A stretch of DNA of 64,000 nt, from positions 1 through 64,000 of IMG/VR virus record IMGVR_UViG_3300035156_000206; one strand, 5' to 3'. Shown piece by piece: positions 3,340-63,862 of this stretch; the first letter of the stretch is position 1; each line of letters starts with the position of its first letter. The position numbers and the translations under genes were made by a program. The notes beneath the pieces are model-generated. The model saw nothing but the letters and a program-made list of their open reading frames with translations, was not told where the DNA came from and ran no database searches.

Positions 3340-3609
3340 CTACAGCTTCACCCACTCATTGTAGATCTCTTCTGCCTCTGCCTTGATGGAGGCATCAATG
3401 TCCTCGTCCGTCATATCTGCAGTTCGGTCATCGTCCCAGATGGAGTACAGCTCAGTAGCAATAGTGTTCAAAGCTGTCAGCTTCGCATCCGGATCTTTGA
3501 TGTTGATGGCCAGCTCAGGCATATCACGAAGAGTATCTTCTTCACAGCTCTGGTTGTGAACTGCACCAATCAGTGCAGACTTGAACACGCGGAATGTACT
3601 GTTTGCCAT
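3340..3609 (-). CDS. Hypothetical protein
   Basis: start moved to MANSTF after GAGGAG RBS and repeat promoter. Confidence 0.8.
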   Translation of the reverse strand: MANSTFRVFKSALIGAVHNQSCEEDTLRDMPELAINIKDPDAKLTALNTIATELYSIWDDDRTADMTDEDIDASIKAEAEEIYNEWVKL

Positions 3610-3620
3610 TTCATTCTCCT

Positions 3621-3666
3621 CATCAGTTAATACATTCATTATACTGACTTTTGGAAAAATGTCAAC
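3621..3666 (-). promoter_or_regulatory. Early promoter+leader repeat (variant)
   Basis: TTGACA-17-TATAAT...AACTGATGAGGAG. Confidence 0.85.
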
Positions 3667-4397
3667 TAGGCTTTACGCATCACAAACAGAGTCATCGTCT
3701 TGTCTGGAATCTGTTGCAGTTTGTCCTGCTTCAGTTTCCATTGCTCCATGCCGGCAGGCGTCAGGCCCGAAGGTGCTGTACGAGGCAGGGGACGTGCAGA
3801 CCACAACTTGTCATCTGGCAGGTTGCTACCGTTGTAGACGAACGGTTTGCCATTTGCGTCTGGCATTGGGACACCATCAACAATCACATTGATGACATAG
3901 CCACGTGCACCAGCGGCGAGCTTCTTCCACAACTCAGCACCACCTTGGTATTGGGTGTTGTCGCTGATGATCGTCAAGCCCATCTCAACGAGGGCAACGT
4001 ACAGCATCGCACCGTAGCCACCACGAGCCATCTTCGGATCATTTGCAACGACGAGGTCGACCTGCACCGCACCTGGCAATTTAAGGCCCGGATTGCTGTT
4101 GCTGATCATCTGCTCTTTAAAGTCCAGCGTCACGTAGACGGCTGCACCAGCGACATTGTCTGCAGGACGAGTACCGCGCTTACCAATGAATGCTCCGCTG
4201 TGGTCTTGGCGAATGTAGACGACGTAGTTCGGGTCGTCCTTCACCAGCTTGAATTCATCGGCCAAGGTCCGATCGCTAAAGAAGTGATCGAAGCTGCTGG
4301 TATCCATTTGGAGCTTTTTTGGTTTGCCATCGGCATCTTCAGGGGCGTATGGCATCTCTTTGAGCAGGTTCTCGTTAAGTATTTGGTCTAATCGCAT
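3666..4397 (-). CDS. Late protein with GNAT-like motif A and N-terminal ILNE, possible internal head protein
   Basis: 243 aa; MRLDQILNE; ARGGYGAMLY; TAAATA at 4420-4425. Confidence 0.7.
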   Translation of the reverse strand: MRLDQILNENLLKEMPYAPEDADGKPKKLQMDTSSFDHFFSDRTLADEFKLVKDDPNYVVYIRQDHSGAFIGKRGTRPADNVAGAAVYVTLDFKEQMISNSNPGLKLPGAVQVDLVVANDPKMARGGYGAMLYVALVEMGLTIISDNTQYQGGAELWKKLAAGARGYVINVIVDGVPMPDANGKPFVYNGSNLPDDKLWSARPLPRTAPSGLTPAGMEQWKLKQDKLQQIPDKTMTLFVMRKA

Positions 4398-4418
4398 TTG
4401 GGTTCCTTTGTTATGGGC

Positions 4419-4718
4419 TTATTTAGCCTCGAACTGAGACAAGAACTCCAGGCAGTCCTTCAAGCCATCACGGCCGACGAACACAATATGATCTTGATCT
4501 TCGGGGCCATAGACAACGAGGATGTTGCATTCGTCCATGTCGAGGCTCTGGCGACCATTACGATCCCCGTACACCCAGTGGCGACCATAGGCACCTGCTT
4601 TGGTGTTGATGAGCTCTTTGATCTCGTCATCATCGTATACCTTGTCCTGCGAGCCATGCGTGACGGCACCGAACACTTTAACCTCAGACAATGGAGGTGG
4701 GCTGTAGATGGTAATCAT
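4419..4718 (-). CDS. Hypothetical protein
   Basis: start moved to MITIYS after repeat leader. Confidence 0.75.
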   Translation of the reverse strand: MITIYSPPPLSEVKVFGAVTHGSQDKVYDDDEIKELINTKAGAYGRHWVYGDRNGRQSLDMDECNILVVYGPEDQDHIVFVGRDGLKDCLEFLSQFEAK

Positions 4719-4727
4719 TGAATGCCT

Positions 4728-4776
4728 TTCGTCAGTTGATATTCCTATTATACTGACTTTCTTACAAAAAGTCAAC
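4728..4776 (-). promoter_or_regulatory. Conserved early promoter+leader repeat
   Basis: TTGACT-17-TATAAT...AACTGACGAAAGG. Confidence 0.9.
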
Positions 4777-4793
4777 TGACGTAGGCTTAAAAG

Positions 4794-5087
4794 TTATGTC
4801 GCATCCGATGTGCGTCTTTGTGGCATTCTTGAGACCAGTTCTTCGAACCAGCCTGGGACGCGCTTGTAGTTGATGTACGCGGCAATGTGCTTGGGATAAA
4901 CTTGCTCCAGCTTTGCCAGGTCATCTGCATCAGCAATCCAGATCAACTCCCAGAGGGCGTTGTTGAATTTGTCTGCTGTGCCGTAGTGCTTGCATTTGAT
5001 TAGGGATAACTCTCCCTCGTCCAGATCGATGTCTGGCTTAGCATCCTCAGGACGCTGCTCTTCCTTAGGATCACCAATAATGTACAT
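4794..5087 (-). CDS. Hypothetical protein
   Basis: 97-aa ORF; GGAGG RBS; TTGACA-17-TATAGT promoter near 5120-5148. Confidence 0.8.
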   Translation of the reverse strand: MYIIGDPKEEQRPEDAKPDIDLDEGELSLIKCKHYGTADKFNNALWELIWIADADDLAKLEQVYPKHIAAYINYKRVPGWFEELVSRMPQRRTSDAT

Positions 5088-5166
5088 CTTGATACCTCCG
5101 TTGTGAGTGTCAGTAAGTCACTATACTGTGTTACGGAGGAAATGTCAACGATCACATCGCAAAAGG

Positions 5167-5420: not shown

Positions 5421-5617
5421 TGGGCAGGACTAGATGGAATCGCACCACCGACCTCTTGGTTAAATACCAAGCGCTCTACCATCACGGCCGTTGGTTGGAG
5501 CACCCAGGTAACGTTACCTCCCGGGCGAGTCTGACGTCGTTTCGTGATGTTGGACATTCACATTAACGAGGAGGCCTCCCCGTCGCAGCCGCAGTCCACA
5601 AACTGAGCTATAGTCCC
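5421..5617 (-). ncRNA. tRNA-like RNA (UUU anticodon) with 120-nt insertion in the D-loop
   Basis: GGGACTA/TAGTCCT acceptor, GCTC/GAGC D-stem, CTTGG/CCAAG anticodon stem, GGTGG/CCATC T-stem; insert 5481-5600. Confidence 0.8.
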
Positions 5618-5629
5618 ATTGATCTGTAA

Positions 5630-7904: not shown

Positions 7905-7933
7905 ATTTTATCACATACATCGTCAAAAGTCAA
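7905..7933 (-). promoter_or_regulatory. sigma70-type promoter of the 140-nt sRNA
   Basis: TTGACT-17-TAAAAT. Confidence 0.8.
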
Positions 7934-7949
7934 CGATTAATTCTGGGAT

Positions 7950-8213
7950 GAAGATTCAACTAGAGCTACTGCTGATGCAGGACTTAGGTAGCTACTCCCA
8001 GTCGTACACCAGCCTTCGAGTCCATCTCCGCTGACTCGCGCTCGATCCGGCATCCCCTGTCAGGGCCCTTCAACTGATTGGCTGCATGAGTGGTCTCAGT
8101 GTTCACGAACTGGTGCTCTATGCGCGGCACTCAACGAGCCGCAGAACGCGCGTTCATTAGTACTAAGCCCTACAGGCTGACAGGCCTGTTCACTCACTTC
8201 TAGTTGAACCTTC
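7950..8213 (-). ncRNA. Candidate 264-nt multi-helix RNA
   Basis: 15-bp closing helix GAAGGTTCAACTAGA/TCTAGTTGAATCTTC; CCTGTCAG/CTGACAGG; several hairpins; no credible ORF. Confidence 0.7.
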
Positions 8214-8322
8214 TTTATGAGCATGTCTCTATATAATGGCATGCGCATAAAGAAGATCCCTCTTCTTCCTAGTTTCCGTTCTAGGTTATGGGGCACTCCC
8301 CATTCGGTAACTGCAAGTTATT

Positions 8323-8475
8323 TGGTACCGGGGGCAGGCCTCGAACCTGCAAAAAAGCAAACTCAACACGGCCGTGCCTTGTTCGCCCTTACAACCCATG
8401 GCCTCCCCACTCACCTAGTCTAGCTTCACTGAGCAGGTACTAACACAGGGCGTCTACCACTTTCGCCACCCCAGC
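8323..8475 (-). ncRNA. tRNA-Leu-like RNA with about 60 extra nt in the anticodon/variable region
   Basis: GCTGGGG/CCCCGGT acceptor, Leu-type D-arm GGCGAAAGTGGTAGACGC, GCAGG-TTCGAGG-CCTGC T-arm, ACCA; 153 nt. Confidence 0.75.
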
Positions 8476-8483
8476 ATAACTCT

Positions 8484-8645
8484 TTAGTCGACGAGGTCAC
8501 CCGCGTCAACAAAACTTTCACCCCAACGAACCATCAGGCCAAGCAGGAAGCCAACAACGGCACCGATAACAGGCTCTGCCCAGACATAATGTCCAACGAC
8601 GGCACCGAGAGCAGTACTCAACACCAACAGCAAAAATGTCAACAT
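8484..8645 (-). CDS. Small membrane protein, 53 aa
   Basis: hand-translated MLTFLLLVLSTALGAVVGHYVWAEPVIGAVVGFLLGLMVRWGE...; AAGGAG RBS. Confidence 0.65.
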   Translation of the reverse strand: MLTFLLLVLSTALGAVVGHYVWAEPVIGAVVGFLLGLMVRWGESFVDAGDLVD

Positions 8646-8661
8646 GCACTACTCCTTAAAA

Positions 8662-9059
8662 TGGGTCCCCCTTTCGATGACAGGGACTAGTGAACCTTTC
8701 GGCTCAGTAGCGGGGGATTATTTCAACCCTGCAAAGTTAGTTAGGCGTAAGCCGCTACTTTGAATTGTGAGTCGTTTGCATTTACATGCTTGCATCTTTT
8801 CGCCTTACGGCCGAGGATCGCTTCTCGTGTTGTCAACCTACGGTTATCTCACCACGTCGAAACCAGGTCGCCCCCATCAGCTGCACTTTCAGGTCTATGT
8901 CTGGTGTACCAGTCCTGAGAATTGATGTTATCTCATCTTCGAAAGCGCAGTTGGTGGAGGCGGCGGGAATCGAACCCGCGTCCGCAATGCCTTCACTTTG
9001 GCATCTGGATAGGTCTTACCCTACCCCACAACAATGTATCCGTTGATTTCTCAACTGAT
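8662..9059 (-). ncRNA. ssrA: Circularly permuted (two-piece) tmRNA
   Basis: acceptor piece ending GGTTCGATTCCCGCCGCCTCCACCA at 8952 is transcribed before GGGGGCGACCTGGTTTCGAC at 8875; tag ANDSQFKVAAYA at 8741-8779; outer ends approximate. Confidence 0.9.
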
Positions 9060-9065
9060 GAAGCC

Positions 9066-9094
9066 ATTATATAGACTTCTTCAGTTGAAGTCAA
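9066..9094 (-). promoter_or_regulatory. sigma70-type promoter of the tmRNA/ncRNA operon
   Basis: TTGACT-17-TATAAT inside inverted repeat. Confidence 0.8.
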
Positions 9095-37079: not shown

Positions 37080-38429
37080 TTACACTCCGAAGTTGTGAGG
37101 GGCGATGTTAACCGAGTCGAACTCTCCACCGAATGATGGTACAGCAACTGAGTAGAACTGCGACTTCACAGAACCGTCTGGCACTTGCTTATCGGGACGA
37201 CTATGCTGACGGTCCAGCAACTGCTGTAACGATGCTGGGATGTACAAGGCAGTAACACGCATCCCACGCTGACGAGCCATATCGATGTAACGCTTTCGAC
37301 GTTTGGCACCAAGGTTGGTGTTATCTACCAAGATGTGCTTGTTGTCTTTGAACACCGCATTGATTGCCTCTGTCACATACGCATCGAACTCTTTCTCATT
37401 CGCTACCGCATATTCATAGGCGCTGTGGTAGTTGAAGCGGTTGCACTCGGGAGAGATCCCTTTCATCACGTCAACGTGGCCTAAAGCAAACTTGTAACGC
37501 AAGTCGTCAAGTGAGAACGGGACGAACCCTGGCAATGCCGCACGCAATGAAGACTTACCAGCACCTGATGGACCAATCATCATGATCATCTCAGGTGTAT
37601 CTTGTTTGTTGTTGATCTGTTCGTTCAGATGAAACACAGTAGCCCCCATGTTCTCCAGAGTAGATTGGCGTTCAGCAATCCAATCCATCATGCGACCGCA
37701 GTTACCAGCGTAGTCGTCCGAATCGCGTCCTTCTGTATCGCCCTTCAGCATGTTGAAGAACACCTCTGGTCCATTAGGCAAGAAGGTCATTACCAACGAC
37801 TTGTCAAGTGCCAGTACTTTGTCCTTGTTCTTCAGGCCGTAAGGCAAGTGATGCTCGATCATCCATGTGATGACATACACGTCCCAGATCGTGATCAGAC
37901 CTTCGAACATCGCCCAGTTGTCGATCACGTAGCCTTCGAACCTGCGGGCAGACTCAGCTTCGTGGCCAGCATATGAACGGTATTCACCACGCTCATCGGA
38001 GATCTTTGTTACTTCCGCTGCAGGCTTGCCTGTATCGTGGAACAGCAAGGCCAGCGATACCAGAACGATGTGGCGACGATTGAACCAGTTGTGCTCTTCT
38101 GCTACCCTGCGTTCACCTGAGGCAGCATTCAATCGTTCGATGTTGCCTGGTGAGAACGTATCCACACACTCCATCTCAAAACGCTTCAGCAATTGCTCAC
38201 GTTCCGAGTCATATTCAACCAGTGTTGGCTTTGGGAAGTGCTTGGCAGCTGCTACCAGAGTCATCTCGGTATGGAAAGCCACATTGGCTTCACGGTGCCA
38301 AGGAGAGTCCTCGACAGTGTTCTGCATCTCTTTCCAAAAATCTGTCAGCTTGAATTCCCCGATTAACGCTTGTAAACGCGTTAAATCGTATTCTAAGCGT
38401 GGTTTTGCTGTGGAATCAGTAGTAGTCAT
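37080..38429 (-). CDS. HD-domain plus P-loop (AAA_33/PNK-like) kinase fusion
   Basis: WH.E..V..HT and LFHDTGKP; GPSGAGKS and LVDNTN motifs. Confidence 0.85.
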   Translation of the reverse strand: MTTTDSTAKPRLEYDLTRLQALIGEFKLTDFWKEMQNTVEDSPWHREANVAFHTEMTLVAAAKHFPKPTLVEYDSEREQLLKRFEMECVDTFSPGNIERLNAASGERRVAEEHNWFNRRHIVLVSLALLFHDTGKPAAEVTKISDERGEYRSYAGHEAESARRFEGYVIDNWAMFEGLITIWDVYVITWMIEHHLPYGLKNKDKVLALDKSLVMTFLPNGPEVFFNMLKGDTEGRDSDDYAGNCGRMMDWIAERQSTLENMGATVFHLNEQINNKQDTPEMIMMIGPSGAGKSSLRAALPGFVPFSLDDLRYKFALGHVDVMKGISPECNRFNYHSAYEYAVANEKEFDAYVTEAINAVFKDNKHILVDNTNLGAKRRKRYIDMARQRGMRVTALYIPASLQQLLDRQHSRPDKQVPDGSVKSQFYSVAVPSFGGEFDSVNIAPHNFGV

Positions 38430-59957: not shown

Positions 59958-60175
59958 GTTCTGCCAGGGAGAGGCGTTGAACCCTCTCCTTTCCTTGCAC
60001 AAAAGATTCACCTAAATATTTTCATCGAAAGTAGTTGACTGGTTTGCTGAAGTTGTTGAATATGGACAACATTGATGCAAACGACCGGGGATTCCGGTGC
60101 ACAGTAAACACTTCACCCAGTTTTGTAGTACCGTCCAGGATAGACCTGAACGTTTTTATTATAGAGGATTTCTAT

Positions 60176-61387
60176 ATGTCACATGCAACAACTCCCGCCC
60201 TCAAGAAATACGATGTCATCTTTTTCATTTGCCGTGCCCAGCCATTTACAAATGGCCACAAGCACAACATTGATCAAGCGCTTGAACAAGCCAATCGTGT
60301 TGTAGTTGTCCTGGGTTCAGCCCACCGGGCGCGCGATGTCCGCAACCCATTCACATACGAAGAGCGCAAGGCAATGATTCGCGATGTGTATCGTGCTGAA
60401 GGCATCGACCACCGCATTTCGTTCCGCCCGCAACGCGACTATCCATACAGTGATACAATGTGGGCATCGTATATACAGAAGACTGTTAGCGACTACTGCT
60501 CGACTTACCATATGGGCCGAACGGACGTCAAGGTCGGCCTAATCGGCCACATGAAGGAAGACACTTACTACCTGAATCTGTTCCCGCAGTGGGACTTTGT
60601 TCCAGTGCAAGGCATGGGTGACACATCGGATATGAATGCGACGAATGTTCGCAAGGCGTACTTCGAAGAATCTACGTTCCATGGCCGCGAAGGTGCCGAG
60701 TATAGCCTGCTCGACTATATCGAGCAAGTGACCAATCGTGTTCCTGCCCTTGTCAGCTATTTTTTATATGAATTCAAGTACGGCGTGAAGCCAGGTAACA
60801 TCAGCTACGCAGAGCTGACCAAACCACGCACAGACGGACCAACTCCTGTGTGGCCTGCGCCTGAGACACTGACGGATCAGTATCGCAACCTCAAAAATGA
60901 GCACTTCCACATCAAGAAGTACCGTGCAGCATGGGATGCAGCGCCATATGCACCGATGTTTGTTACGTGCGATTGCCTGATCGTGCAAAGTGGTCACGTA
61001 CTGCTGATCCAGCGCAAAGCGGCACCAGGCAAAGGTCTCTGGGCAATCCCAGGTGGCTTCCTAAACCAAGGCGAACGGATCGTTGATGGTATCTTCCGTG
61101 AGCTGAAGGAAGAAACAGTCATCAAGGTACCAATGAAGGTACTTCGTGGTAGCCTGGTTGGCCAACATGTTTACGACCACCCTCAGCGTTCACAGCGCGG
61201 CCGTGTGATTACGCATGCAGGCGTTGTGCACCTCGAAGACGGTCCACTGCCGAAGGTAAAGGGTTCAGACGATGCTGCCAAGGCAAAGTGGTTCCCAATC
61301 AACGAAGTGTACAAGATGCAAGACCAATTCTTCGAAGACCACTTCTTCATCATTGAAGACCTTCTGAACCGTTTCCCAAAGAAGTAA
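60176..61387 (+). CDS. nadM: Bifunctional NMN adenylyltransferase / ADP-ribose Nudix hydrolase
   Basis: RAQPFTNGH, GSA...RNPF...ER; Nudix box GGFLNQGE...RELKEET. Confidence 0.92.
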   Translation: MSHATTPALKKYDVIFFICRAQPFTNGHKHNIDQALEQANRVVVVLGSAHRARDVRNPFTYEERKAMIRDVYRAEGIDHRISFRPQRDYPYSDTMWASYIQKTVSDYCSTYHMGRTDVKVGLIGHMKEDTYYLNLFPQWDFVPVQGMGDTSDMNATNVRKAYFEESTFHGREGAEYSLLDYIEQVTNRVPALVSYFLYEFKYGVKPGNISYAELTKPRTDGPTPVWPAPETLTDQYRNLKNEHFHIKKYRAAWDAAPYAPMFVTCDCLIVQSGHVLLIQRKAAPGKGLWAIPGGFLNQGERIVDGIFRELKEETVIKVPMKVLRGSLVGQHVYDHPQRSQRGRVITHAGVVHLEDGPLPKVKGSDDAAKAKWFPINEVYKMQDQFFEDHFFIIEDLLNRFPKK

Positions 61388-61396
61388 GGCACAGCC

Positions 61397-61648
61397 ATGA
61401 AATTCTTACCGACTGAAGTGCTCGATTCAGTATTGGCAAAACACATCCTCCAGATCAACGAGGATTCGACTGTGATGGAGGTGTTTCGCATCTACGACGA
61501 GATTACTCTGATGCGGGACCGGGACCCAGTAGTATCGTACCGCATCATCGCCAAGATCAAGGATTTCCTGGACAAAGCGATGGTTCGTGACAACATGACG
61601 CTCAAAGAGCTGGGTAACCGCGCCATGTGGCGCGATGAAGACAATTAA
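61397..61648 (+). CDS. Hypothetical protein
   Basis: 83-aa ORF. Confidence 0.7.
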   Translation: MKFLPTEVLDSVLAKHILQINEDSTVMEVFRIYDEITLMRDRDPVVSYRIIAKIKDFLDKAMVRDNMTLKELGNRAMWRDEDN

Positions 61649-61659
61649 GGAACAGTACC

Positions 61660-61929
61660 ATGGCTACAGAACTTTCGCGCGACGAGCGCATTGACTTGGC
61701 AGTATGTTATTATGGTTGGTACACATTCGGCATGGCTGCAACTGACTCGGAACGATGTGATGAGGACTGTGCCATGGACAATGGAGGAGTACCACGATAT
61801 GCAGATCAACTGACTGAAAAACACATCGAGGTGCTGGATCGATTGAAACGGGTACCAGCCCATCCAATTGAATCCATTGATGCTATATTAGCACGCCACC
61901 CAGAGTGGAAGCTTCCACCTCTCAACTAA
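61660..61929 (+). CDS. Hypothetical protein
   Basis: 89 aa; AAGGA RBS. Confidence 0.7.
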   Translation: MATELSRDERIDLAVCYYGWYTFGMAATDSERCDEDCAMDNGGVPRYADQLTEKHIEVLDRLKRVPAHPIESIDAILARHPEWKLPPLN

Positions 61930-61940
61930 GGAACGTTATC

Positions 61941-62186
61941 ATGGCAATCCAACCAACAACATTTGCACTCGTCGACATGACAGACCATTCGTTCCTCAAC
62001 TGGAACCTACCGTCGTGGAAGGCAGCAATGAACTTCCATGCTGATTACGTGAACAAACACAACATCGGCATTGTAAAGATTCACAACCGTGTGGTTGTGA
62101 CTGAGATGAGCAAGAACGCAAACAGGCCTACACGCAGACAACGCATCAACCTGGCACTTGCTCGTACGAAATACCCTTTGCGATAG
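61941..62186 (+). CDS. Hypothetical protein
   Basis: 81 aa from MAIQPT; AAGGA RBS. Confidence 0.7.
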   Translation: MAIQPTTFALVDMTDHSFLNWNLPSWKAAMNFHADYVNKHNIGIVKIHNRVVVTEMSKNANRPTRRQRINLALARTKYPLR

Positions 62187-62224
62187 ACGCACTGGGCCTA
62201 CCAATTTGTTAAAGGAGTTTTAAC

Positions 62225-63862
62225 ATGAACACCATCGAAACCAAAATGAACACCATTGCAGCATCAGTCCGTCACGGATTTGAATCCATTCAAGACCAAA
62301 TCCAATCACTGCGCGGTGCATTGACAAGCGACTACAACGTTGCTCTTGATACCGATAGCTACAAACCATCGCACTTCCTGCAGTACCCGCCTAACACGGA
62401 ATACGTGTTCTCGTACGTCGAAGCTCGTGGATCGAGCGACAAGCCGTCGTCGAAGATCATGAAGTCCTTGGAAAACTACCTAACGCCAGAGATGCTGAAG
62501 CTGTTCAAGGCAGAGAATACCACTCAGCCATTCAACTTCACACTGATGTTCGGTCTCCAGTACATCAACAAAATGTACCTGAGCAAGCGCGTCACCAAAG
62601 AAATGGTCGATTACGCTGCCAAGGAATGGAAAGCTCACGGCGAGCCATTCAACTACGACGGTTGGATGTACATTGTCAATGAGCTGGAAGGCAAGTTGCC
62701 AGTTCGCATTCGTGCAGCCAAAGAGGGAGCCATCATCCCTCTCAAGAACGCGCTGATCACAGTTGAGAACACCGATCCCAAATGCTTCTGGCTGACTTCG
62801 TACATTGAGCCAGCAATCCTCCGCGTATGGTATGGCATCACTGTTGGTACACTCAGTTGGACCATCAAGCAGATCATTGCTGCATACCTGCGCAAGAGCT
62901 CAGATACCATGGATGGCCTGCTATTCAAGCTGCACGACTTCGGCTCACGTGGCGTCAGCTCGTACGAAAGTGCGGGCATTGGTGGTGCTGCTCACTTGGT
63001 CAACTTCATGGGCAGTGACACAATGCGTGCCATCCAGGTGCTGAAAGAGATCTACAATGTGGGCGAGGATGAAATGCCTGCATACTCGATCCCAGCTGGT
63101 GAACACAGTTCGTTCACTTCATGGCGCAAGGAATTCGAGAAAGAAGCTTACCGCAACATGATCGTCCAGTTTGGTAAGCCAGGCGCCTTGTTTGCTGCAG
63201 TGTCTGACTCGTACGACATCTTCAATGCAGTCGACAATATCTGGGGCAAAGAGCTGAAAGACGAACTGATTGCATCCGGTGCCACCGCAGTCATTCGCCC
63301 TGACAGTGGCGAACCAAAGGACATCGTCCTCAAAGTTGTGCAACTGCTGGACAAGAACTTCGGTTCGACCATCAACAGCAAGGGATACAAAGTGTTGCAC
63401 CCTTCAGTGCGTGTCATCCAAGGGGATGGCATTAACCTGGATAGCGTTAGCGAAATCTACGACACGCTGCTGGCTGCTGGCTATAGTGCAGACAACGTCG
63501 CCCTGGGAATGGGTGGTGGACTGCTGCAAATGGTCAATCGTGACACATTGCAGTTCGCAATGAAGTGCTCGGCTGCAAAGGTTGCTGGCGAATGGGTTGA
63601 CGTATACAAAGACCCAATCACCGACAGTGGCAAGCGCAGCAAGCGTGGCCGTGTTGGTCTGTTCCAGAACACGGTAACCAGCGAATATGCCACCATTCGC
63701 CTGGATGAAGTCACAGAGCTGAATGGAGAATTCGAGCACAAGGGCGAGATCTACATCGATGCGATGGACACCGTATTTGAGAATGGTGAAGTGCTTGTCG
63801 ATGAAAAGCTGGATGTCATCCGGGCACGATCGAACGATCACTACTTTATCGTCAGCCGTTAA
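62225..63862 (+). CDS. nadV: Nicotinamide phosphoribosyltransferase
   Basis: DTDSYKPSH, HDFGSRG, SDSYD, IRPDSG, VIQGDG motifs. Confidence 0.95.
   Translation: MNTIETKMNTIAASVRHGFESIQDQIQSLRGALTSDYNVALDTDSYKPSHFLQYPPNTEYVFSYVEARGSSDKPSSKIMKSLENYLTPEMLKLFKAENTTQPFNFTLMFGLQYINKMYLSKRVTKEMVDYAAKEWKAHGEPFNYDGWMYIVNELEGKLPVRIRAAKEGAIIPLKNALITVENTDPKCFWLTSYIEPAILRVWYGITVGTLSWTIKQIIAAYLRKSSDTMDGLLFKLHDFGSRGVSSYESAGIGGAAHLVNFMGSDTMRAIQVLKEIYNVGEDEMPAYSIPAGEHSSFTSWRKEFEKEAYRNMIVQFGKPGALFAAVSDSYDIFNAVDNIWGKELKDELIASGATAVIRPDSGEPKDIVLKVVQLLDKNFGSTINSKGYKVLHPSVRVIQGDGINLDSVSEIYDTLLAAGYSADNVALGMGGGLLQMVNRDTLQFAMKCSAAKVAGEWVDVYKDPITDSGKRSKRGRVGLFQNTVTSEYATIRLDEVTELNGEFEHKGEIYIDAMDTVFENGEVLVDEKLDVIRARSNDHYFIVSR

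What the first reader, a model, noticed from the sequence alone, without database searches (positions are those of the whole stretch)
8323..8475. tRNA-Leu-like RNA with an expanded anticodon region
Seen: acceptor, Leu-type D-arm, T-arm and ACCA are intact, but about 99 nt lie between D- and T-arms instead of about 40. CUGUG can pair with CACGG; removing about 60 nt after U33 would give loop UU-CAA-GG (Leu CAA), but that register is my inference. Possible roles: spliced tRNA, LeuRS decoy (LeuRS largely ignores the anticodon, so it could still be charged), or scaffold.
Basis: partly seen in the sequence, partly recalled or inferred. Interest (0 to 1): 0.75.

Follow-up and report, generated by a model that had tools for sequence, protein, structure and literature searches.

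The report
Oversized leucine-tRNA-like gene in phage
A large soil phage carries a 153-base gene with the outer parts of a leucine tRNA and an oversized, unrecognisable middle; it is real and has relatives in kind in other phages, but nothing tested here shows that it is spliced into a working tRNA.

Summary
On the minus strand, 8475 to 8323, lies a 153-nt gene with a paired acceptor stem, a Leu-type D-arm, a canonical T-arm, A73 and an encoded CCA. Ninety-nine nt sit where about 35-40 are expected. It lies in the tRNA/tmRNA cluster of a 292-kb phage record from a biocrust metagenome.

The proposed splice (remove 60 nt to give Leu-CAA) is only one of many registers that ARAGORN accepts. Its CUGUG/CACGG stem is no better than chance. 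With the tRNA frame enforced, that stem has about zero probability and costs 14 kcal/mol. The resulting variable region is unpaired. No group I, bulge-helix-bulge (BHB) or other known ribozyme signal is present.

The favoured fold is a class-II cloverleaf in which both the anticodon arm and the variable arm are elongated. A decayed Leu(UAG) anticodon arm is still in place.

A second interrupted gene lies at 5618 to 5421: a tRNA-Lys(UUU) with about 120 nt in its D-loop, the phage's only Lys tRNA. Its insertion shares two 9-mers with this one (P about 3.5e-4).

No homologue of the middle region and no RNA reads were found, so the function is inferred. My ranking: unspliced non-decoding tRNA mimic 0.4, inert relic 0.3, spliced tRNA-Leu 0.2. 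The closest precedent is the 'enigmatic' tRNA introns of megaphages.

The parts
8323..8475 (-). Whole 153-nt tRNA-Leu-like gene. Its 5' end is at 8475 and the CCA ends at 8323.
   Evidence: Sequence; ARAGORN with introns allowed; whole-record frame scan.
8469..8475 (-). Acceptor 5' strand GCUGGGG. It pairs with 8327-8333 (CCCCGGU), with wobbles G1.U72 and U3.G70.
8450..8466 (-). Leu-type D-arm GCG-AAAGUGGUAGA-CGC, with G18 G19 present.
   Evidence: The exact 19-mer occurs at 44 places in bacterial genomes, about 37 of them in an ordinary tRNA-Leu. It matches the phage's own tRNA-Leu(UAG) at 18 of 19 positions.
8433..8449 (-). Decayed anticodon arm in its original place: CCUGU-GUUAGUA-CCUGC. 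Only 2 of 5 stem pairs remain and the loop still carries UAG.
   Evidence: 11/17 identity to CCAGG-UUUAGGU-CCUGG of the phage's own tRNA-Leu(UAG) after a 1-nt shift; stem count.
8395..8449 (-). Elongated arm 1, in the anticodon-arm position. It consists of helix A CCUGUG/CAUGGG, an internal loop UUAGUA/GAGGC, and hairpin B CCUGCUCA/UGAGUGGG with a 16-nt apical region (loop) that holds minor internal pairs.
   Evidence: Constrained fold; pair probabilities 0.91-0.99.
8400..8408 (-). Motif 1, GGGGAGGCC. It occurs only twice in the 292-kb record; the other copy is inside the insertion of the Lys gene.
8353..8390 (-). Elongated arm 2, in the variable-arm position. It is a 38-nt hairpin C: a 10-bp lower stem, an AA/GA internal loop, and an upper stem GGCAC/GUGUU closed by a GGCC loop.
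   Evidence: Constrained fold; pair probabilities 0.68-1.0.
8367..8375 (-). Motif 2, ACGGCCGUG (part of the palindrome CACGGCCGUG). It is shared with the insertion of the Lys gene, where it ends 2 nt before the 3' exon.
8334..8350 (-). T-arm GCAGG-UUCGAGG-CCUGC with a canonical T-loop.
8323..8333 (-). Acceptor 3' strand CCCCGGU, discriminator A73 and the encoded CCA. Together with the T-arm this makes a 29-nt stretch that is identical in unrelated metagenome contigs L232, L233, L234 and L237.
8484..8645 (-). 53-aa hydrophobic ORF with a strong AAGGAG ribosome-binding site. It lies between the tmRNA and the Leu-like gene, in the same inferred transcription unit.
   Evidence: no family hit.
8650..9044 (-). 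Permuted (two-piece) tmRNA gene with tag peptide ANDSQFKVAAYA, upstream in the same unit.
   Evidence: ARAGORN; Rfam RF04321, 108 bits.
9066..9094 (-). Sigma-70-type promoter TTGACT-17-TATAAT (11 of 12 positions). It is the only promoter-like site upstream of tmRNA, ORF53 and the Leu-like gene.
   Evidence: This is a consensus match only; expression is inferred.
5421..5618 (-). Companion gene: tRNA-Lys(UUU) split by an insertion of about 120 nt in the D-loop. The insertion spans 5600-5481, with junctions uncertain by 1-2 nt. Non-canonical A33 and G55.

Best explanation
This is a gene derived from a tRNA-Leu, probably of the UAG type. It has kept the parts that make a tRNA-shaped body: acceptor stem, D-arm, T-arm, A73 and CCA. 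It has lost a working anticodon stem and has acquired about 65 extra nucleotides.

It is most likely transcribed from the promoter ahead of the tmRNA gene. It would then be cut out by the ordinary tRNA end-processing enzymes and would persist UNSPLICED as a roughly 153-nt RNA. That RNA folds as a class-II cloverleaf whose anticodon arm (55 nt) and variable arm (38 nt) are both elongated.

I take it to be a non-decoding tRNA mimic. It would act through its tRNA body, for example by being bound or charged by LeuRS, or by occupying host enzymes that attack or handle tRNA. It would not read codons.

The extra sequence is related to the insertion that splits the D-loop of the phage's only tRNA-Lys gene.

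Shown here: the anatomy, the fold preference, the shared motifs and the genomic setting. Inferred: transcription, processing, absence of splicing, charging and any decoy role.
For: - The frame is intact and unmistakably Leu-type.
- The frame is conserved selectively. The acceptor stem differs completely from that of the paralogous tRNA-Leu(UAG) yet is fully paired, and the D-arm matches at 18/19. By contrast, the anticodon-arm remnant in its original place keeps only 2 of 5 pairs.
- With the frame enforced, the ensemble strongly prefers two elongated arms, with pair probabilities of 0.9 or more. The linkers are 0, 4 and 2 nt, which is class-II tRNA topology.
- The insertion shares two 9-mers, in the same order, with the insertion in the Lys gene. 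P is about 3.5e-4, and GGGGAGGCC occurs nowhere else in the 292 kb.
- The gene sits in a stable-RNA unit behind a near-consensus promoter.
- A single capped scan of viral contigs returned 48 other distinct genes that have a Leu-type frame around a 90-120-nt non-tRNA middle. Most cannot be read as decodable tRNAs.
- One such family keeps its central hairpins through compensatory changes.
- The phage carries a tRNA-repair kit, Rnl1 and a polynucleotide-kinase-like domain. This fits a phage in conflict with its host over tRNA.
Against: - No homologue of the 99-nt middle was found anywhere, so there is no covariation or conservation test.
- The fold is not significantly more stable than shuffled sequence: z = -0.9 for the whole RNA and -1.2 for the middle.
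- There are no RNA reads.
- In DNA contigs from an aquatic metagenome, a roughly 85-90% identical relative covers the flanks but not 8170-8637. This hints that the stretch is dispensable or variable, but the contigs are tiny.
- Two wobble pairs in the acceptor stem and three disruptive changes in the anticodon stem also fit simple decay.
- The Lys companion gene, with clean exons, argues that in this phage such insertions may be removed.
Confidence: 0.4

Rival explanations
1. Inert relic. A duplicated or captured tRNA-Leu gene was hit by an insertion, possibly a small mobile or recombined segment of the same kind as the one in the Lys gene. It is now decaying, and the RNA, if made at all, does nothing.
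For: - The anticodon stem in its original place keeps 2 of 5 pairs, and no variable-arm hairpin survives.
- The acceptor stem has two wobble pairs.
- The Rfam tRNA model gives no hit at all here. It does pass its gathering score on interrupted Leu genes of other phages: L141 at 39 bits and L182 at 37 bits.
- Folding is no better than shuffles.
- The phage already has tRNA-Leu(UAA), tRNA-Leu(UAG) and an odd CAG-bearing tRNA-like gene.
- No homologue exists, and a relative's contigs leave a possible gap over this stretch.
Against: - There is not one disruptive change in the roughly 57 nt of frame, against three in the 10 nt of anticodon stem.
- The CCA, A73, G18G19 and the T-loop are all canonical.
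- The motifs shared with the Lys insertion are unlikely by chance.
- The extra sequence folds into two arms that respect cloverleaf topology.
Confidence: 0.3
2. Intron-containing tRNA gene. An internal segment of about 60 nt is removed from the transcript and the halves are rejoined into a decoding tRNA-Leu (CAA in the reader's register). Because no self-splicing core is present, an unidentified endonuclease would have to cut, and the phage's polynucleotide kinase and Rnl1 ligase would heal and seal.
For: - ARAGORN calls tRNA-Leu(caa) after the 60-nt deletion.
- The companion Lys gene becomes a clean tRNA-Lys(UUU), with a canonical GCUCAGUU|GGUAGAGC D-arm, once about 120 nt are removed. Lys is the only amino acid without an ordinary tRNA among the 29 tRNA genes found.
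- The two insertions share motifs.
- Other huge phages carry tRNA-Leu genes with 62-73-nt inserts in the anticodon loop. Some of these pass the Rfam tRNA threshold.
- Megaphage tRNA 'introns' are on record (PMC6784885; PMC13037316).
- Rnl1 and a PNK-like domain are encoded.
- UUG is the second most used Leu codon, at 17 per thousand.
Against: - The register is not unique and ARAGORN does not discriminate.
- The stem is at chance level and thermodynamically disfavoured by 14 kcal/mol in the precursor.
- The variable region would be 21 unpaired nt.
- The supposed intron starts inside ancestral anticodon-arm sequence.
- Motif 2 would be exon here but intron in the Lys gene.
- There is no group I or other ribozyme hit and no BHB beyond chance.
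- The record encodes no EndA and no RtcB.
- No spliced reads are available.
Confidence: 0.2

Closest known systems
'Enigmatic' introns in tRNA genes of Lak megaphages (Devoto et al. 2019, PMC6784885), also reported for jumbo phages in PMC13037316
   Same: A phage tRNA gene that is longer than expected and missed by bacterial tRNA finders. It is recognisable only when an internal stretch is skipped, it has no known splicing mechanism, and it lies in a large phage with many tRNAs.
   Different: - Those introns were supported by identical copies across cohorts and by alignment with intron-less alleles. Here no relative is available.
- Those phages use an alternative genetic code. This one uses the standard code: long ORFs are open under table 11, and the stop codons used are TAA 59, TGA 18, TAG 4.
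- Here the exons do not give a clean tRNA. The excess seems to lie in both central arms, not in the anticodon loop alone.
Ordinary bacterial class-II tRNA-Leu
   Same: Acceptor stem, D-arm (an exact 19-mer match), T-arm, A73 and CCA. The five-arm topology with a long variable arm is also shared.
   Different: The anticodon arm is 55 nt instead of 17 and has no apical 7-nt anticodon loop. The variable arm is 38 nt instead of 13-21. The Rfam tRNA model is silent.
Cyanobacterial and plastid tRNA-Leu(UAA) genes with a group I intron
   Same: A tRNA-Leu gene interrupted in its central part. Two other phage genes found here, L122 and L141, carry their 62-71-nt insert at or beside the U34/A35 site that is classical for this intron (the U34/A35 site itself is from my own knowledge; the insert positions are).
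   Different: The insert is far too short for a group I core.
Interrupted tRNA-Leu genes of other IMG/VR phages (L141:8714-8859, L182:2526-2674, L122)
   Same: The same Leu-type frame, a total length of 146-156 nt, and a location in phage tRNA arrays.
   Different: - Those have well-formed anticodon stems and variable arms.
- L141 and L182 pass the Rfam tRNA gathering score.
- The L122 and L141 inserts share a core, GACGGUGCGAAUCCGGAAUCC, and fold like a nested mini-tRNA.
- None shares sequence with the window's insert.
tRNA mimics that work through a tRNA-like body (tmRNA; bacterial Y-RNA-like YrlA)
   Same: An RNA with an acceptor and T-arm module fused to a non-tRNA domain. A tmRNA gene lies 175 nt upstream.
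   Different: There is no Rfam match to either family. No Ro/Rsr (TROVE) gene is in the record. Unlike YrlA, the ends of this RNA form the acceptor stem. Unlike tmRNA, it has a full D-arm and no reading frame.

Membership tests
Canonical tRNA (Rfam RF00005) | Scores at or above the family's gathering score (29 bits) against the covariance model. | tested here: not met
   No hit at the gathering score. No hit at E up to 10 on 8200-8600.
Canonical tRNA (Rfam RF00005) | Acceptor stem, D-arm with G18G19, T-arm with a UUCRANN loop, discriminator base and CCA. | tested here: met
   Read directly from the sequence; ARAGORN drawing; D-arm 19-mer shared with cellular tRNA-Leu.
Canonical tRNA (Rfam RF00005) | A contiguous 5-bp anticodon stem closing a 7-nt loop with U33. 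| tested here: not met
   The arm in its original place, CCUGU-GUUAGUA-CCUGC, keeps 2 of 5 pairs. The distant CUGUG/CACGG pairing has probability about 0.
Group I intron in tRNA-Leu | A group I catalytic core (match to the Rfam Intron_gpI model; natural examples are about 200 nt or more). | tested here: not met
   No such match at E up to 10. The insert is only 60-77 nt.
Archaeal/eukaryal protein-spliced tRNA intron | A bulge-helix-bulge (BHB) motif at the two junctions. | tested here: not met
   My own BHB scan found 1 motif in the Leu-like gene and 2 in the Lys gene. About 1.3 are expected in shuffles, and none lies at a plausible junction.
Archaeal/eukaryal protein-spliced tRNA intron | A splicing endonuclease (PF01974) and an RtcB ligase (PF01139) are available. 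| tested here: not met
   Neither is found in the 292-kb record. The record is about 84% complete and the host genome is unknown.
Megaphage 'enigmatic' tRNA introns (PMC6784885) | A phage tRNA gene that is too long for bacterial finders but is called once an internal segment is skipped. | tested here: met
   The test is weak, because ARAGORN accepts a third of arbitrary deletions.
Megaphage 'enigmatic' tRNA introns (PMC6784885) | The insert is conserved among related phages, and alleles without the insert define its junctions. | not testable with these tools
   No relative carrying this locus was found in phage, viral-contig, metagenome or run collections.
Y-RNA-like tRNA mimic (YrlA) | An Rfam match, and association with a Ro/Rsr (TROVE) gene. 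| tested here: not met
   No Rfam match. No TROVE domain in the record.

The most novel reading that the evidence does not exclude
This phage matures two of its tRNA genes by a protein-dependent cut-and-rejoin pathway of its own. An unidentified endonuclease would recognise the shared GGGGAGGCC ... ACGGCCGUG element. The phage's polynucleotide kinase and Rnl1 ligase would then heal and seal the ends. The pathway would remove insertions from non-canonical sites: the D-loop of tRNA-Lys and the central region of tRNA-Leu. That would be enzymatic tRNA splicing in a bacterial virus. It would also give phage tRNA-repair enzymes a constitutive substrate.
Probability: 0.12. Interest if true: 0.85.

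Novelty: new variant of a known kind. Interest (0 to 1): 0.55.

Why it matters
Bacteria and their viruses are thought to have only self-splicing introns in tRNA genes. Over-long phage tRNA genes have been reported once or twice and left unexplained.

This window adds a standard-code soil phage with two such genes whose inserts are related to each other. One insert sits in a D-loop; I know of no D-loop insert in a bacterial or phage tRNA gene, though I did not search the literature for that point specifically.

One capped scan also shows that Leu-type tRNA frames around large foreign middles are common in viral contigs. If these RNAs are spliced, a new processing pathway exists. If they are not, phages make a class of tRNA-shaped RNAs that could be charged or could act as decoys in the conflict over host tRNA-cleaving defences.

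Either way, routine annotation misses them.

Tried and rejected
**Searches for homologues of the locus or its middle. All found nothing useful.**
- GenBank phages, near and distant modes.
- Exact and gapped DNA patterns in viral contigs. The gap range (70-100) could not have matched the window's own 102-nt spacing, which I noticed later.
- Forty phage records that carry a related NAMPT gene.
- Metagenome and genome contigs searched with the 3' half.
- Neighbouring proteins, SprT-like and the 111-aa ORF, followed to their contigs. The closest relative, L114, has ordinary tRNAs Gln, Met, Cys and His upstream of SprT instead.

**Reads.** No RNA run holds the locus. DNA contigs of three other metagenomes do not cover 8170-8637.

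**Known RNA families.** None matches in either insertion.

**Splicing signals and enzymes.** No BHB motif beyond chance. No RtcB, no splicing endonuclease and no TROVE domain.

**Copies elsewhere.** The insertion has no other copy in the genome.

**Alignment of the two insertions.** The score is not above shuffles (p 0.09-0.2). Only the two shared exact 9-mers are significant.

**An alternative excision.** Removing 77 nt between the GUGUU direct repeats leaves a 76-nt RNA with anticodon GAG. Its stem is poor and ARAGORN does not call it.

**Chimera idea.** I considered a chimera of a Leu 5' half with the 3' module seen in L232-L235. I did not adopt it, because the same T-arm also occurs in ordinary Leu and Met tRNAs.

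**ARAGORN as a judge of splice registers or permuted halves.** Rejected: it accepts hundreds of arbitrary joinings.

Full report
**Setting.** The window is the first 64 kb of a 291,967-bp linear IMG/VR virus record, about 84% complete by CheckV. The only sequencing run that holds nearly all of this stretch is a biocrust metagenome. Long ORFs are open under the standard code, and the stop codons used are TAA 59, TGA 18, TAG 4. ARAGORN finds 29 tRNA genes and a permuted tmRNA, all on the minus strand. They are split between 2.4-9 kb and 258-272 kb. Rfam confirms the permuted tmRNA at 108 bits. The genes of the cluster are interspersed with small ORFs behind strong TTGAC-N17-TATAAT promoters. No close relative exists in GenBank phages.

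**The observation.** The element lies on the minus strand, 8475 to 8323. It has:
- a 7-bp acceptor stem GCUGGGG/CCCCGGU, with two G.U pairs;
- a D-arm GCG-AAAGUGGUAGA-CGC;
- a T-arm GCAGG-UUCGAGG-CCUGC;
- A73 and an encoded CCA;
- 99 nt between the D-arm and the T-arm.

The D-arm 19-mer is found exactly at 44 places in bacterial genomes, about 37 of them in an ordinary tRNA-Leu. Many are Leu(UAA) genes of Gemmatimonadota, and several of those carry the same T-stem. So the frame is beyond doubt derived from a tRNA-Leu. Default ARAGORN and the Rfam tRNA model both miss it, the latter even at E up to 10. ARAGORN with introns allowed reports a 93-nt tRNA with a 60-nt intron.

**The splicing register.** Deleting 60 nt after U33 gives a sequence that ARAGORN calls tRNA-Leu(caa). 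This carries little weight, for these reasons:
- With the frame intact, ARAGORN calls a tRNA for 529 of 1653 arbitrary deletions in the middle. Eighteen are called Leu, with five different anticodons. It also accepts hundreds of arbitrary joinings of unrelated halves.
- A perfect 5-bp partner at a permissible distance is expected by chance about once in three to five tries (my estimate). Such stems appear in many unrelated sequences.
- The spliced product would have a 21-nt unpaired variable region.
- With acceptor, D-stem and T-stem enforced, the CUGUG/CACGG stem has ensemble probability of about zero. The best structure containing it is 14 kcal/mol worse than the optimum.
- No Rfam intron or ribozyme family matches.
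- A scan for bulge-helix-bulge (BHB) motifs gives only chance-level hits, away from any junction.
- The record has no splicing endonuclease and no RtcB.

**What the middle looks like.** The constrained fold gives two arms:
- Arm 1, RNA positions 27-81: helix A CCUGUG/CAUGGG, an internal loop UUAGUA/GAGGC, and hairpin B CCUGCUCA/UGAGUGGG.
- Arm 2, positions 86-123: a 38-nt hairpin with a GGCC loop.

Pair probabilities are mostly above 0.9. The linkers are 0, 4 and 2 nt. This is the topology of a class-II tRNA in which both the anticodon arm and the variable arm are elongated. The stability is not significantly above shuffles (z -0.9 and -1.2), so the fold is a best description and not a proven structure.

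Positions 27-43 (CCUGU-GUUAGUA-CCUGC) align 11/17 with the anticodon arm of the phage's own tRNA-Leu(UAG), CCAGG-UUUAGGU-CCUGG, after a 1-nt shift. I estimate p at about 2e-3, allowing for three shifts. Only 2 of 5 stem pairs survive. The ancestral anticodon arm thus seems to be still in place but degenerate. The excess sequence lies mostly 3' of it.

**A companion gene.** A whole-record scan for T-arms followed by an acceptor strand with an upstream complement finds only two long frames. The second runs from 5618 to 5421 on the minus strand, directly after two tRNA-Ser genes and behind a 12/12 consensus promoter at 6026-5999.
- Its exons are clean: GGGACUA-UA-GCUCAGUU | insertion | GGUAGAGC-G-CUUGG-UAUUUAA-CCAAG-AGGUC-GGUGG-UGCGAUU-CCAUC-UAGUCCU.
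- Deleting about 120 nt from the D-loop restores a canonical D-arm, and ARAGORN calls tRNA-Lys(ttt) for all five junction choices tried.
- The Rfam tRNA model gives a partial hit to the 3' two-thirds, 19 bits.
- Lys is the only amino acid without an ordinary tRNA in the set. The record is incomplete, however.
- The gene has non-canonical A33 and G55.

**Shared motifs.** The two insertions share GGGGAGGCC and ACGGCCGUG in the same order. GGGGAGGCC occurs nowhere else in the 292 kb. Two separate shared 9-mers arise in 0.035% of dinucleotide shuffles. Overall alignment scores are not significant. In the Lys gene, motif 2 ends 2 nt before the 3' exon. In the Leu-like gene it forms the top of arm 2. 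The two insertions therefore seem related, by origin or by a common binding partner. They sit at the two places where tRNAs naturally vary in length: D-loop position 17 and the variable region. That these are the variable places is established knowledge; the link to these insertions is my inference.

**The wider picture.** Forty-eight distinct genes among them are not explained by neighbouring ordinary tRNAs. They are heterogeneous:
- A few are convincing interrupted tRNA-Leu genes with 62-73-nt inserts in the anticodon loop: L122, L141/L184, L182, L224. Two of these pass the Rfam tRNA gathering score across the insert.
- The L122 and L141 inserts share a core and fold like a nested mini-tRNA.
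- Most of the others have a Leu frame around a middle that cannot be read as a tRNA.
- One family (L142 and L203) keeps central hairpins through compensatory changes.

None resembles the window's middle in sequence. The literature holds a direct precedent. Lak megaphage tRNA genes carry 'enigmatic' conserved introns, one of which may encode another tRNA (PMC6784885). A 2026 survey reports the same in jumbo phages with alternative genetic codes (PMC13037316). Neither paper offers a mechanism.

**Other context.** The phage encodes a T4 Rnl1-type RNA ligase (PF09511 at 72 bits; phrog_562 at E 8e-87) and a protein with a polynucleotide-kinase-like P-loop domain. This is the heal-and-seal pair that T4 uses against anticodon nucleases (established knowledge). 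It fits a phage engaged in conflict over tRNA. It could also in principle rejoin cut tRNA halves.

**Weighing the explanations.** Three readings remain.

(a) Unspliced, non-decoding tRNA mimic, 0.4.
- For it: the frame is kept selectively while the anticodon stem decays; the extra sequence preserves cloverleaf topology; motifs are shared with the Lys insertion; Leu frames with foreign middles are abundant in phages.
- LeuRS does not read the anticodon (established knowledge), so a Leu frame is the natural chassis for a chargeable RNA with an arbitrary middle. This is an inference and was not tested.

(b) Inert relic, 0.3.
- For it: degenerate stem; no variable arm; no CM score; no significant fold; no conservation data.
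- A relative's contigs cover both flanks but not this stretch. That evidence is weak, because the contigs are 150-260 nt long.

(c) Spliced decoding tRNA-Leu, 0.2.
- For it: the Lys companion, the cases in other phages and the precedent keep it alive.
- Against it: all the points listed above under 'The splicing register'.

No homologue of the locus and no RNA reads could be found. None of the three readings is therefore excluded, and a simple RNA experiment would decide among them.

**Verdict.** It is best filed as a new variant of the poorly understood over-long phage tRNA genes, and the companion D-loop-interrupted tRNA-Lys makes the pair more interesting than either gene alone.

Noticed in passing
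window 5421-5618 (-), insertion about 5481-5600: A tRNA-Lys(UUU) gene is split by about 120 nt in the D-loop (GCUCAGUU | ... | GGUAGAGC). It has non-canonical A33 and G55. Lys is the only amino acid without an ordinary tRNA in this phage. Default ARAGORN misses the gene, and ARAGORN with introns allowed mis-models it as His with a 99-nt intron.
   Followed up: yes
window 8650-9044 (-): A phage-encoded permuted (two-piece) tmRNA gene with tag peptide ANDSQFKVAAYA. It sits behind a near-consensus promoter at 9066-9094. Among cellular organisms this gene arrangement is known, to my knowledge, from alphaproteobacteria, some betaproteobacteria and some cyanobacteria; this may hint at the host.
   Followed up: partly
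window 8484-8645 (-): A 53-aa ORF with two hydrophobic stretches and a strong AAGGAG ribosome-binding site is wedged between the tmRNA and the Leu-like gene. It has no family match.
   Followed up: partly
same record, outside the window: 245240 down to 244980 (-); also L235:5868-5930: T-arm + 3' acceptor strand + ACCA modules are each followed, 7-40 nt downstream, by the complementary 5' acceptor strand and a D-arm. Examples: CCGGCCA...UGGCUGG-UA-GCUC; ACCCCGC...GCGGGGU-UG-GUG; and in L235, CCCCGGU-ACAACGA-GCCGGGG-UA-GCCC. This is the gene order of circularly permuted or two-piece tRNA-like RNAs, as in permuted tmRNA. ARAGORN cannot judge it.
   Followed up: partly
same record, outside the window: about 269315, 268834, 267966 and 266834 (-): Four tRNA-like genes of 72-80 nt have good T-arms and paired acceptor stems, and two end in ACCA. 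ARAGORN does not call them. The one at 266834 has an anticodon loop CUCAGAA (CAG, Leu) and an oversized D-loop.
   Followed up: no
L118-L231 (viral contigs): At least 48 distinct phage genes have a Leu-type tRNA frame around a 90-120-nt middle. Subgroups include a conserved acceptor GUCAGG/CCUGAC without an encoded CCA, internal extra T-arm-like modules (L118, L124, L231), and giant regions after an intact stem-loop (L169, L207).
   Followed up: partly
L002-L013 (viral contigs): A recurrent tRNA-like family of about 145 nt carries a hairpin inserted in the D-loop (GGCGGAAGG-UUAGGGAUUUCCCUGAC-GUGGUAGACGC). It has a variable structured middle with GNRA loops and ends in CCUGACUACAA. It is not in Rfam 15. 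The pair L005 and L007 shows compensatory changes by eye.
   Followed up: partly
L122:7826-7990, L141:8714-8859: Genuine tRNA-Leu(UAA) genes of huge phages carry 62-71-nt inserts at or beside the U34/A35 site. The inserts share the core GACGGUGCGAAUCCGGAAUCC and fold as a closed three-hairpin, mini-tRNA-like unit. One hairpin has the loop CUUAGUA.
   Followed up: partly
L232, L233, L237, L234 (metagenome contigs) against window 8323-8351: The 29-nt T-arm + acceptor + ACCA of the Leu-like gene is identical in GC-rich, phage-like contigs. There it ends a different, poorly tRNA-like 91-125-nt element, about 1.3 kb from a tRNA-Thr.
   Followed up: partly
window 37080-38429 (-); record 68911-70137 (+): A polynucleotide-kinase-like P-loop domain (in a 449-aa protein whose N-terminal half is unknown) and a T4 Rnl1-type RNA ligase. 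Together they form a tRNA heal-and-seal kit.
   Followed up: partly
window 60035-63862 (+): NAD salvage genes: an NMN adenylyltransferase-Nudix fusion and a nicotinamide phosphoribosyltransferase. Related copies of the second gene occur in well over 100 viral contigs.
   Followed up: partly
window 3600-5150 and 7905-7933 (-): A repeated early-promoter cassette (A)GTTGAC(A/T)TTTT...AGTATAAT stands ahead of successive small ORFs. The one before the SprT-like gene is conserved in two distant relatives, L114 and L117.
   Followed up: no
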